A stretch of DNA of 64,000 bases from Diadema antillarum (lineage: Eukaryota). The notes beneath the pieces were generated by a model. The model searched no databases. It was not told the DNA's origin and saw only the letters and a list, made by a program, of their open reading frames with translations. Positions 21,701 through 24,700 of the stretch are shown here, piece after piece (position 1 is the first letter of the stretch; each line of letters starts with the position of its first letter). A program made the position numbers and the translations under genes. Where the stretch lies: positions 372,001 through 436,000 of the forward strand of contig NW_027272270.1 in assembly GCF_040938485.1 (NCBI RefSeq), in the 5' to 3' direction.

Positions 21701-24700
21701 CTGAAGACCAGAAACGAATCCACGACGAGATTAACCAAGTATATTATGAAGTCCTTTTCTTGACAAGCTTGTCTTTGTTAGATATCATCGAAAATTATTC
21801 CCTCTCATAATGATATCTGTAAAGCCAGCAGGATTTCTAATGAATTTTTAATGTGTCATGCATGAATGACGCTCTTTAGTTTTGTTTAACAACTTCTCTC
21901 ATTCCTTATGAATAAAAAGGAATATGATCCTGGAATGTTAAATGAAAGCTATATGGAGTATTCAGCTCAGTACACACAATAGGGCCTACAGTATCAAACC
22001 TAGCACAAGCAGAATATTTTACAAATTTATTTCTATAAAATATTAAAACGAGCTTTTTTTTTTCTCCCTCAATCGGGACACTTTAGGTAAATGTTACTTG
22101 ACGCACGTTTCTTGCCGCACGTTACATCATAAAGTATTCAGAAACTCAAAAGCAATCGGAGAGCACAAACCTCCACTAAGTCCATAGGGTAAATAATTCC
22201 GCGACTTACAACTTGGGCCGTGCACGCATATCGTCCATGGAATATCCTGGAATATCCTATCCATAATGTTCCGAATCACCTACGAAAATATATTCCCTCC
22301 GGGTATTCCCTTCATTCTTTTTAGGACATTCCAGAAAATTAGTTCATTAGATTTCGACAGTCATCGATAACAGATAAACTATCATAAAGAAACAAGTAAA
22401 CAAATGATGTAAAAAGCATACAGTAACCTCCATGACGGACGATGATAACCAATAGAGAGAACTAATAAAACTGATTTGATATCAAGTAACATTAATTATC
22501 AAAACATCAACAATGGCCTCTTATTAACTCCCAGGTGGTTCAACAAGGACCCGTTCTCTGGTCACACCGGACGCATCTACCGTACACTGAGGCGGCTATC
22601 ATGGAGGTTCAGCGGCTTGCCTGTGTCGCCCCGATGGTACCTCACAAAGCTATGACCGACACCGAATTGTGCGGTTTTCATATATCTAAGGACTGGAACG
22701 TGTATCTCAACGTGTGGTAAGTCCTTTCGGAGAATGAATATGAATAAATAAACAAACCAAACATCCCCCCCCCCCAAAAAAAAAAAAAAGAGGGAGAAAA
22801 TCACATAGGATCATGCTTTTACATCTTAAACACCGCAAATCATTGCATTTATATGCTTCTCTTAAAAGCCTAAGACAAAATAGGCCCTATTGAATTTCTG
22901 AGCTGGATAGAAGTCGATAGGTATGTATTCCGAAATATCGAATGAGAAAGAAATAATGTTGGCGGACATTAGCGAGCTTCAGATCTGCAACGCGAACGTT
23001 AAGACGGCATTGATTACCGGTAGGCAGGGGAAAAAATGCGTGAGACAGCCGTTTCCATTGTCCAACCCGGGAGACAGCGTCGTCTTTGCGTTCGCGTCGC
23101 AGATCTAAAGCTCGCTGTCGTGTCCACTGATTGGCACATAATGACATAGATTATTAGTTGTTGAATTAGATACATGTATAAGATTTGAATTGAACACACG
23201 CACCAATGCATGCCTACACAAACAGTCACGTTATAATATATTAGTTACGCTGTCGACACGTCTTGATTAAAATATGTCAGTGCAATATCAAACGGCTATA
23301 GCAAATGTTCACCAGCATGGTAAGATCATCAATATAACATTATTGCAAATCTCATGGTGGTTCTTCCAAACTTTGAATATTCGAACGAGGCATTTCTATA
23401 TCTGTCATTTGTATGTATCAATCGACATGTAGAATTTGCTTGGACTCTACTTTCAATAGTGTTGCAAACTCTGACTTGTTTACGTCTGCATGTTCACGCG
23501 GAATTTACACCAGAGGAATCTGGAATGATGTAACAGGTGATGATACTTGCAGAAATGTTGACAAACGTTTTTATAATGTTTACGTTTATAGCTCATTTTG
23601 TCAATAGAATGCCGAAGTGATGATGTCACGGCCTTTTGTTCTAGCTTGGGTTGAAAACAGGTGCGCAAATAAACACTCAGGTCAGGTGTTTTTTGTCTGT
23701 TTGTTTGTTTGTTTTTGAAAGAACCAGTTTCCATGTCGATGAATGGCTATGGCATCACATTTTGGTACTCGGCCATTCCAATTCTGTTTTCTAAAGATGT
23801 CTACAATTCTTAGACTGTTGATTCTCGTTTATTCCGAGTTTAGAGATTTTTGTATTCCCTGTCTTGACCTTTGCAGCTCTAGTCTAGATCACATCTGAAG
23901 ATTATCATGCGCATATTATCAAGCTGGATTTTTTTTTGTTGCATTTTCTTGGTTTTTCCCCCTTTTGTATCAACTTAAACGCCAACATACTCCTAAAAAG
24001 ACAAAATTCTGCAATGCATGATGGGGACGCAATGCGACTCGAGCTTATAAAGCTGCCCCTTGCATAATGGCGATATTTCGTCATATTCGTCCCCCATCCC
24101 AATGCCATCTTTATCAGTATTTTGTTTGTTTGTTTGTTTGCACTGCAGGGCCATTCATCGAAATCCAGATTTTTGGCCTGAGCCAGATCGGTTCGATCTG
24201 GCTCAGGCCGTTTCATAGGCGCCGATGGAGCAGTCATCAAACAACCGAATAACTTCTTGCCGTTTTCCATAGGTAGGCATTTCAACTTATTATTACTGCA
24301 AAATCATGGAGACTGAATCATAATGTTAGATTCACATAATAGAATTTTGAAGGAGGAGGCCCATTTTGCCCTCCCATTTAGTCTTTCACATATCACCTTC
24401 AGTTCTCGTCAGTAACATAATGCCGGAATTTATTGCCCTATCTTACAATTATAACTCTATTTTCTACAAATATAACCTTCCCTTTTACCATGTTTACATA
24501 GGCATATAGGTCTACACCGTATAATCTTTTAGTCTATAGTGATGCTGTCTGTTAGTATGTCTCTCAGTGATGACGATGATGATAGTGATGAATATAATGA
24601 TATCATCACTGTAATAGTTATCTCTCCATCTGTCTTACTTGTCTATATTTTATCGTTGTCAGGAAAGCGTGTGTGTATTGGTGAGCAGCTGGCGAAAAAG

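What the first reader, a model, noticed from the sequence alone, without database searches (positions are those of the whole stretch)
24175..24218. Hairpin-perfecting 5-nt insertion (template switch) knocks out CYP-B at the PERF motif
Seen: exon 6 contains a perfect 16-bp inverted repeat, GGCCTGAGCCAGATCG-GTT-CGATCTGGCTCAGGCC. Removing TGGCT (24199-24203) restores PEPDRFDPGRFIGADGAVIKQPNNFLPFSIG and the 119-nt exon length of CYP-D. TGGCT is exactly the complement of AGCCA in the opposite arm. With it the frame ends at TAG 24216-24218, before the heme Cys. Known: quasi-palindrome correction by polymerase template switching gives this signature. Inference: a clear natural case of template-switch gene inactivation.
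Basis: partly seen in the sequence, partly recalled or inferred. Interest (0 to 1): 0.7.

Follow-up and report, generated by a model that had tools for sequence, protein, structure and literature searches.

The report
Hairpin-making mutation breaks a P450 gene
In a sea-urchin cytochrome P450 gene, one replication slip copied nine bases off the opposite strand of a neighbouring stretch; this made a perfect 16-bp hairpin, added five bases and broke the reading frame, a clean natural example of a mutation type that is already well known.

Summary
Arms 24175-24190 and 24194-24209 are 100% complementary with a 3-nt loop, inside exon 6 (24149-24272) of a clan-2 P450 gene. The exon is 124 nt, against 119 in paralog CYP-D, and the frame stops at TAG 24216-24218, before the heme cysteine.

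It is not an assembly slip. Contigs from two runs of the same species (different samples and studies) match the window exactly across the site.

A related species has a 119-nt open exon reading FDPNRF. A divergent second contig in the same species, probably paralog CYP-B', also shows C and A at 24199 and 24201. So the event rewrote 24199-24207: two substitutions plus five added bases, all complementary to the gene's own left arm. This fits template switching better than a plain insertion does.

Two qualifications apply.
- The indel rows for two of the three relatives were hidden by the reads tool.
- The assembled allele has a second lesion, a 247-nt MITE in the last exon, which appears younger.

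CYP-B' is long dead. The mechanism is well known, so this is a good new instance with modest interest. An earlier scan note (s1-217791) described the surrounding duplication, not this site.

The parts
24175..24190 (+). Left arm of the hairpin, which served as the donor (template). It codes (W)PEPDR.
   Evidence: It is unchanged in the second same-species contig (X1 record 8). The related species differs at 24182 (C) and 24185 (G).
24191..24193 (+). Loop GTT, not inverted.
   Evidence: No differences are listed here in any relative.
24194..24209 (+). Right arm, the recipient. It is now the exact reverse complement of the left arm.
24199..24207 (+). The rewritten tract TGGCTCAGG. It replaces an ancestral 4 nt (CGAA or CGAC), a net gain of 5 nt.
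   Evidence: In one search, run X3 shows deletions at 24199-24201, 24203 and 24206 and substitutions 24204 C>G and 24207 G>A. X6 and X1 record 8 show 24199 T>C and 24201 G>A.
24216..24218 (+). Premature TAG in the shifted frame.
24149..24272 (+). CYP-B exon 6 (PERF-motif exon), 124 nt instead of 119.
   Evidence: Pfam p450 profile positions 363-384.
18755..22716 (+). CYP-B exons 1-5: 18755-19142, 19767-19909, 20794-21091, 21530-21738 and 22535-22716. All are open with GT-AG borders.
   Evidence: Pfam p450 matches on exons 3-5. The best solved relatives are CYP2A6, 2D6 and 2C.
24663..25107 (+). CYP-B exon 7 (heme cysteine, GKRVCIG), split into 24663-24758 and 25016-25107 by an insertion. The stop is TGA 25105-25107.
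   Evidence: Pfam p450 profile positions 407-436.
24759..25005 (.). A 247-nt MITE-like insertion in exon 7. It has a 10-nt target-site duplication GTGCCGGAGG (24749-24758 and 25006-25015), terminal inverted repeats of about 31 nt, and CCCTAA-like repeats inside. It brings in a stop at 24770-24772.
   Evidence: Word depth is about 54,000 at its end.
50278..50396 (-). CYP-D exon 6, the intact 119-nt paralog exon (…DPDKFNPERF…).
60789..63598 (+). CYP-B', the tandem-duplicate copy of CYP-B (exons 1-4 lie in the window). It is a decayed pseudogene.
   Evidence: TGG>TGA at codon 4, two 1-nt deletions, 135-nt and 419-nt losses, and a stop in exon 3.

Best explanation
One short-range template switch during DNA synthesis in the CYP-B lineage caused this. 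After the nascent strand had copied ...GATCG GTT CGATC, its 3' end paired back onto the just-made GATCG (or onto the same letters on the sister strand). The polymerase then copied the left arm backwards, adding TGGCTCAGG(CC), and returned to the proper template at the CC before GTTTC. This replaced about 4 ancestral bases (CGAC or CGAA) with 9 bases. The results were a perfect 16-bp palindrome, a 5-nt net gain, loss of the Pro-x-Arg-Phe part of the PERF motif, and a stop 7 codons later, ahead of the heme-binding cysteine. Shown here: the palindrome, the frameshift, its presence in two read sets, the 119-nt open state in a related species, and the fact that every changed base matches the left arm. 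Inferred: the enzymology (intra-strand or inter-strand switch), the exact immediate ancestor, and that this event came before the MITE as the first disabling hit.
For: The palindrome is perfect, with z = -9.8 and no equal in 100 simulated windows. Contigs identical to the window span the site in X1 (24169-24690, 0 differences) and in X2 (24147-24690, 0 differences), which come from two samples and two studies. Related-species run X3 reads TGG CCT GAC CCG GAT CGG TTC GAT CCG AAC CGT TTC, which is WPDPDRFDPNRF, 5 nt shorter and open. X6 and X1 record 8 both show C at 24199 and A at 24201. The polarity is fixed independently by the protein family: CYP-D and solved P450s read F-x-P-E-R-F at this spot. 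The T at 24199 complements A at 24185, a state specific to this species' left arm, so the right arm was copied from the present left arm. No other copy of TGGCTCAGGCC exists in the window, so there is no donor locus for gene conversion. The chance that two substitutions and five added bases all match the complement is about (1/3)^2 x (1/4)^5, roughly 1e-4 (my arithmetic). Exons 1-5 and both halves of exon 7 are otherwise open, which fits a recent event. The mechanism and its signature are described by Ripley 1982 and by the four-point model in PMC5453318.
Against: The runs are Logan contigs, not raw reads, and one of X1 and X2 may be the source of the assembly. The reads tool hid the indel rows for X6 and X1 record 8 (41 rows not shown), so their 5-nt gap is inferred and only X3 is explicit. 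If those two have no gap, the five extra bases would predate CYP-B. The identity of record 8 as CYP-B' is inferred from its divergence (8.8% substitutions, against 6.6% for B versus B' non-coding sequence). No RNA data were found, so loss of function is inferred from the sequence alone.
Confidence: 0.8

Rival explanations
1. The long quasi-palindrome with the five extra bases already existed in the common ancestor of CYP-B, CYP-B' and one related-species individual (the 'no gap' reading of X6 and record 8). CYP-B then only corrected two mismatches (C>T at 24199 and A>G at 24201). In that case the frameshift is old and the perfecting step did not cause it.
For: The substitutions shown for X6 and X1 record 8 fit this reading as well as the gap reading. 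The no-gap version would fold at -12.4 kcal/mol as an 8+5-bp quasi-palindrome, a classic substrate for correction.
Against: It needs a frameshifted exon to persist in two species and two paralogs while X3, under the same species label as X6, is open and 5 nt shorter. In X6 the supposed right arm would mismatch its own left arm at two places. X3 and the gap version of X6 differ by a single base (AAC versus ACC), which is far simpler.
Confidence: 0.1
2. It is an assembly or sequencing artefact, because palindromes provoke errors in long-read consensus.
For: The region is a perfect hairpin. The published assemblies of this species were troubled by retained haplotypes (PMC13511894). Elsewhere in this stretch (23773 and 23809) both read sets disagree with the window.
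Against: k-mer contigs from two runs, two samples and two studies reproduce the window letter for letter over more than 520 nt across the site.
Confidence: 0.03
3. Ordinary independent mutations (a 5-nt insertion by slippage plus point changes) made the palindrome by chance, or gene conversion from another locus made it.
For: Indels and clustered substitutions are common in decaying duplicates. CYP-B versus CYP-B' shows about 10% gap columns in non-coding DNA.
Against: TGGCT is not a tandem copy of its neighbours. All seven changed or added bases match the complement of the left arm, with chance odds of about 1e-4. No other source of the 11-mer exists in the window.
Confidence: 0.04
4. The hairpin is kept for a function, such as an RNA structure or small-RNA precursor arising in a dead gene.
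For: Template switching is reported to create RNA hairpins and new miRNA precursors (PMC8794818 and bioRxiv 10.1101/2023.04.19.537475, listed; I saw only the listed titles and abstract openings).
Against: The stem is only 16 bp with a 3-nt loop, too short for a miRNA precursor by general knowledge. No RNA run holds the locus. No conservation can be shown.
Confidence: 0.02

Closest known systems
Quasi-palindrome correction, or short template-switch mutation (Ripley 1982; four-point model of Loytynoja and Goldman 2017, PMC5453318)
   Same: An imperfect inverted repeat becomes perfect in one step. A tight cluster of substitutions plus an indel is fully explained by copying the reverse complement of adjacent sequence. 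The outcome is a frameshift, as in the classic bacterial and phage reporters.
   Different: The pre-existing complementarity was short, at 5 bp plus a 2-bp return anchor. The classic model assumes a near-perfect repeat, so this case fits the generalised four-point model better. It is a natural germ-line event in an echinoderm gene, with the donor arm, recipient arm, paralog and sister species all available.
Template switching between inverted-repeat arms in yeast coding genes (PMC8604942)
   Same: The arms of an inverted repeat are homogenised inside a protein-coding sequence, causing multinucleotide change.
   Different: That study set indels aside and looked at amino-acid replacement in working genes. 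Here the event adds 5 nt and disables the gene.
Clan-2 cytochrome P450s (CYP2/CYP1/CYP17-like), tandem-duplicated xenobiotic-type arrays
   Same: Pfam p450 matches on exons 3-7. The best solved relatives are CYP2A6, 2D6 and 2C. The I-helix GGTDT, the PERF region and FSIG|KRVCIG are present. The gene lies in a head-to-head, segmentally duplicated array with birth-and-death turnover.
   Different: This copy is a pseudogene. No CYP family number can be assigned without a full-length comparison, which was not run.

Membership tests
Template-switch mutation (quasi-palindrome correction / four-point model) | The derived sequence holds a perfect inverted repeat where the ancestor had an imperfect one. 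| tested here: met
   The derived state is 16/16 complementary. The related species X3 has only a 7-bp stem and folds at -7.4 against -21.3 kcal/mol.
Template-switch mutation (quasi-palindrome correction / four-point model) | Every clustered difference (substitutions and indel) is explained by one copied reverse-complement fragment of nearby sequence. | tested here: met
   24199-24207 is the reverse complement of 24177-24185, and no unexplained change lies within the arms.
Template-switch mutation (quasi-palindrome correction / four-point model) | The direction of change is fixed by an outgroup. | tested here: met
   X3 is explicit; X6 and X1 record 8 are partial. The conserved F-x-P-E-R-F in CYP-D and in solved P450s fixes the 119-nt state as ancestral.
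Template-switch mutation (quasi-palindrome correction / four-point model) | The variant is real, not a mapping or assembly artefact. | tested here: met
   Identical contigs occur in X1 and X2, from two samples and two studies. These are contigs only, not raw reads.
Template-switch mutation (quasi-palindrome correction / four-point model) | Exact immediate ancestor known in the same lineage (CYP-B' exon 6). | tested here: inconclusive
   The indel rows of X1 record 8 and of X6 were not shown. CYP-B' exon 6 lies beyond the window.
Template-switch mutation (quasi-palindrome correction / four-point model) | Intra-strand versus inter-strand switch, with spacer inversion as the sign of the latter. 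| tested here: not met
   The loop GTT is unchanged in all relatives, so there is no spacer inversion. This is diagnostic of a subtype, not required for membership.
Cytochrome P450 (PF00067), clan 2 | Match to the P450 profile above the curated cut-off. | tested here: met
   Exon 3 scores 27.3 bits, exon 4 59.5, exon 5 49.3 and exon 7 33.6, against a cut-off of 22.8. Exons were searched separately, not as a joined model.
Cytochrome P450 (PF00067), clan 2 | Heme-binding signature F-x-x-G-x-R-x-C-x-G in frame with the rest of the protein. | tested here: not met
   The letters FSIG|KRVCIG are present, but they lie downstream of the frameshift and the TAG at 24216-24218.
Cytochrome P450 (PF00067), clan 2 | PERF motif. 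| tested here: not met
   CYP-B reads PEPDRFDLAQAVS*. Relatives read FDPNRF and CYP-D reads FNPERF.
Non-processed (duplicated) pseudogene | Introns are retained and there is at least one disabling lesion. | tested here: met
   Seven exons with GT-AG borders, the frameshift and the MITE with a stop.
Non-processed (duplicated) pseudogene | No functional transcript or protein. | not testable with these tools
   No RNA run holds the stretch.
MITE (the exon-7 insertion) | Terminal inverted repeats, target-site duplication, small size, no coding capacity and high copy number. | tested here: met
   The TIRs are 31 nt at 93.5%, the TSD is 10 nt and perfect, and the element is 247 nt. Word depth is about 54,000 at its end in all four runs. 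The superfamily was not determined.

The most novel reading that the evidence does not exclude
The template switch was the founding hit that retired the last working copy of this CYP2-like lineage in this species. It was caught so early that every other exon is still open and a later MITE insertion is still polymorphic. That would make it a datable germ-line template-switch knock-out in an animal, with donor arm, recipient arm, dead sister copy and intact sister-species orthologue all in hand. The several other perfect hairpins in the same 64 kb would hint that such switches are unusually frequent in this genome.
Probability: 0.3. Interest if true: 0.45.

Novelty: new member of a known kind. 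Interest (0 to 1): 0.33.

Why it matters
Template-switch mutations are thought to be under-called, because the tight clusters of changes they make confuse aligners and variant callers (PMC5453318). A case in which the event is polarised by a paralog, a sister species and a conserved protein motif, and in which it visibly kills a gene, is a useful teaching and benchmarking example. It also shows how a member of a detoxification-type P450 array dies. It does not reveal a new mechanism or a new kind of element.

Tried and rejected
- **Fetching CYP-B' or orthologue DNA.** A word search with the exon-6 ORF (window 24060-24215) found no candidate. A metagenome scan with a degenerate left-arm pattern found nothing.
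- **Reading hidden indels from the 'from_end' column.** This column counts alignment columns: it agrees with reference distances in X3 despite deletions and is shifted by insertions in X6. It therefore cannot reveal deletions.
- **de Bruijn branch logic.** Contigs break at 24169 because the 30-mer 24169-24198 is shared. This cannot separate the gap and no-gap readings either.
- **Motif scan for a full heme signature.** It failed at first because the motif is split by the intron between exons 6 and 7; one search resolved it.
- **** failed because one piece was too short and was repeated.
- **** printed a useless long translation because of a coordinate bug. It was not used, and the exon borders were redone by eye.
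- **The big protein search** was not used, because the claim does not rest on it.
- **Findings search** for 'template switch palindrome hairpin insertion' returned nothing.
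Full report
**1. The observation**

The window holds a perfect inverted repeat, as described. The arms are 24175-24190 and 24194-24209, 16 nt each and 100% complementary, with a 3-nt loop GTT. As single-stranded DNA it folds at -21.3 kcal/mol. Dinucleotide shuffles average -4.4, giving z = -9.8, and none of 200 shuffles folds as well.

In 100 second-order Markov simulations of the whole window, no non-simple perfect arm of 14 nt or more with a loop of 10 nt or less appeared. 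The real window holds five more perfect hairpins with arms of 16 nt or more. All of them lie in non-coding DNA.

**2. The setting: a clan-2 P450 gene**

The repeat lies in an exon bounded by AG and GT, 24149-24272. The exon is 124 nt long. Its frame reads AIHRNPDFWPEPDRFD and then runs into TAG at 24216-24218. Leaving out 24199-24203 gives 119 nt and an open frame. The paralogous exon of CYP-D (50278-50396, minus strand) is 119 nt and reads ...DPDKFNPERF....

The exon pieces match Pfam p450 (PF00067) in the right order:
- exon 3 matches profile positions 131-230;
- exon 4 matches 237-306;
- exon 5 matches 312-368;
- the first part of exon 6 matches 363-384;
- exon 7 matches 407-436.

The best solved relatives of exon 4 are CYP2A6, 2D6 and 2C. 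The CYP-D exon 6 aligns its FNPERF to the same motif in CYP17A2, CYP1A2 and a plant P450.

I searched the exons one by one by reference.

**3. Gene map of the window**

Self-comparison shows this layout:

| Gene | Strand | Position |
|---|---|---|
| CYP-A | minus | about 12095 to 7198 |
| CYP-B | plus | 18755-25107 |
| CYP-C (truncated) | minus | 41734-40605 |
| CYP-D | minus | 54405-49535 |
| CYP-B' | plus | from about 60789 to beyond the window end |

The pairs A/B and D/B' are a segmental duplication with a period of about 42 kb. This agrees with the earlier scan note s1-217791. That note also names the species as the sea urchin Diadema antillarum. I did not test the species name, because the run names were coded.

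My model of CYP-B has seven exons, all with GT-AG borders:
- exon 1: 18755-19142
- exon 2: 19767-19909
- exon 3: 20794-21091
- exon 4: 21530-21738
- exon 5: 22535-22716
- exon 6: 24149-24272
- exon 7: 24663-24758 plus 25016-25107

Exons 1-5 are open. Read through its two lesions, the gene would encode 508 residues (my count from these coordinates).

**4. Is the variant real?**

The run search found two runs of 'organism A' from different samples and studies, holding 85% and 84% of the sampled words. It also found several runs of a related 'organism B' holding about 10%. All of them are kept as Logan contigs, not raw reads.

When laid on 23400-25000:
- X1 has a 522-nt contig on 24169-24690 with no difference and no gap;
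- X2 has a 545-nt contig on 24147-24690 with no difference and no gap.

The five extra bases and the perfect palindrome are therefore not a slip of the assembly. One of the two runs may be the source of the assembly, so I count this as at least one independent confirmation.

**5. What the relatives show**

*X3 (organism B).* Its single contig differs from the window as follows: 24182 G>C, 24185 A>G, 24199-24201 left out, 24203 left out, 24204 C>G, 24206 left out and 24207 G>A. Applied to the window, this reads TGG CCT GAC CCG GAT CGG TTC GAT CCG AAC CGT TTC, which is WPDPDRFDPNRF. The exon is then 119 nt and open.

*X6 (organism B, another study).* It shows 24182 G>C, 24185 A>G, 24199 T>C and 24201 G>A.

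*X1 record 8.* This is a second X1 contig, at depth 28.8, with 17 substitutions and 24 gap letters over 24169-24386. It shows 24199 T>C and 24201 G>A, and its left arm equals the window's.

Record 8 is about as far from CYP-B (8.8% substitutions) as CYP-B' is in the part I can see (6.6% in non-coding DNA). It shares all ten of its listed differences with organism B. I take it to be exon 6 of CYP-B'.

The tool showed only the best-supported 12 of 53 indel rows, all of which carry X3. Whether X6 and record 8 have a 5-nt gap at 24203-24207 was therefore not shown. If they do, both read GAT CCG ACC CGT (DPTRF), one base from X3. If they do not, both would carry a frameshifted 124-nt exon.

**6. 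Reconstruction of the event**

The ancestor of the right arm was therefore CGATC-CGA(A/C)-CC. It paired with the left arm only through GATCG/CGATC. In organism B, whose left arm reads CGGATCG, this stem is 7 bp.

The present right arm, CGATC-TGGCTCAGG-CC, differs from the ancestor by two substitutions and five added bases. All seven are the complement of the left arm, 24177-24185 read backwards.

The T at 24199 pairs with A at 24185. That A is shared by CYP-B and record 8 but not by organism B, so the copy was made from the left arm in its present form.

By my arithmetic, the chance that independent changes would all fit is about (1/3)^2 x (1/4)^5, or 1e-4. The 11-mer occurs nowhere else in the window, which argues against gene conversion. 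TGGCT is not a tandem copy of its neighbours, which argues against slippage.

The direction of change does not depend on the hidden rows. The 119-nt state encodes the conserved Pro-x-Arg-Phe of the family, and the 124-nt state destroys it.

**7. Mechanism**

This is the signature of a short template switch. It was first proposed for quasi-palindromes by Ripley (1982) and generalised as the four-point model, in which replication leaves its template, copies a nearby stretch in reverse complement and returns (PMC5453318).

In this case:
- the nascent CGATC could pair with GATCG;
- synthesis ran back along the left arm for 9-11 nt;
- the strand returned at the CC that precedes GTTTC.

The loop is not inverted in any relative. 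This is expected for an intra-strand fold-back, though an inter-strand switch is not excluded. The starting stem was only 5 bp. The classic model assumes a near-perfect repeat, so the case fits the generalised model better.

Loss-of-function template switches have been reported before, and arm homogenisation within yeast coding genes has been surveyed with indels set aside (PMC8604942). The kind is therefore known.

**8. Is it the knock-out?**

The frameshift removes the PERF motif and everything after it, including FSIG|KRVCIG. It is disabling on its own. The assembled allele has a second lesion, however.

Exon 7 is split after 24758 by a 247-nt element (24759-25005). The element has a perfect 10-nt target-site duplication, GTGCCGGAGG, terminal inverted repeats of about 31 nt at 93.5% identity, and CCCTAA-like repeats inside. 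The frame then ends at ...SVPEACFF*. The rest of the exon resumes at 25016 and aligns with the CYP-D tail. Word depth of about 54,000 at the element's end in all four runs marks a high-copy MITE.

An X2 contig matches exon 7 without a difference up to 24758, the last base of the first duplication copy, and then runs on for 109 nt unlike the element. The organism B contig of X6 also stops fitting exactly at 24758, and X3's stops fitting slightly earlier, at 24716. This is what an empty site would look like, since the continuation (25016 onward) lay outside the stretch I laid.

I infer, but have not shown, that the MITE is younger than the hairpin event and perhaps still polymorphic.

**9. The sister copy and timing**

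CYP-B' is long dead. Its lesions are:
- TGG>TGA at codon 4;
- two single-base deletions in exon 1;
- loss of the last 135 nt or so of exon 1;
- a 419-nt loss that takes the I-helix half of exon 4;
- a stop in exon 3.

Between CYP-B and CYP-B', exons differ at 4.0% of sites and non-coding DNA at 6.6%. Codon differences are 17 non-synonymous to 9 synonymous. Constraint on the pair has therefore been weak.

CYP-B has only two lesions, and both look young: the palindrome is undecayed and the target-site duplication is perfect. It was probably the last working copy of this lineage here and died recently.

**10. Open points**

- In X1 the contigs identical to CYP-B have depth 13.6-19.2, while the divergent ones have 27-31. 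In X2 the two classes are equal, at about 3-7. I cannot explain the X1 ratio. Hemizygosity of the CYP-B unit is one possibility.
- At 23773 and 23809, the only X1 and X2 contigs covering those positions disagree with the window.
- The published heterozygosity of D. antillarum is 2.52%, and a standard assembly retained both haplotypes (PMC13511894). This is a reason for care with 'duplicates'. However, CYP-B and CYP-B' lie 42 kb apart with no N run between 17123 and 59145, and they differ far more than alleles would.

**11. Verdict**

It is a clean new instance of a known kind of mutation in an ordinary, decaying P450 duplicate. Interest is modest.

Noticed in passing
window 24759-25005 (TSD copies at 24749-24758 and 25006-25015): A 247-nt MITE-like element sits inside the last exon of CYP-B. 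It has a perfect 10-nt target-site duplication, terminal inverted repeats of about 31 nt and telomere-like CCCTAA repeats inside, and its copy number in the reads is very high. Contig ends at 24758 in X2 and in organism B run X6 suggest an empty site there.
   Followed up: partly
window 60789-63598: CYP-B' is a decayed pseudogene. It has TGG>TGA at codon 4, two 1-nt deletions, a 135-nt loss at the end of exon 1, a 419-nt loss that removes the I-helix half of exon 4, and a stop in exon 3.
   Followed up: yes
window 8186-8256; 44596-44659; 37837-37871 and 38448-38482; 7845-7876: These are other perfect hairpins in non-coding DNA, with arms of 34, 27, 17 and 16 nt and loops of 0-10 nt. None of 100 simulated windows reached 14 nt. 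They may be transposon ends or further template-switch products.
   Followed up: no
window 23400-24690 (table 8): In run X1, contigs identical to CYP-B have about 0.6 times the depth of the divergent CYP-B'-like contigs (14-19 against 27-31). In X2 the two classes are equal. The CYP-B unit may be hemizygous in that animal, but this is unexplained.
   Followed up: no
window 23767-23824: Both same-species read sets show the same 126-nt contig with C>T at 23773 and 23809 and 8 gap letters, and no contig identical to the window. This is either a local consensus error in the assembly or a repeat effect.
   Followed up: no
window 16994-17122 and 59146-59347: Two N runs lie in the duplicated upstream regions of CYP-B and CYP-B', but not at homologous positions.
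   Followed up: no
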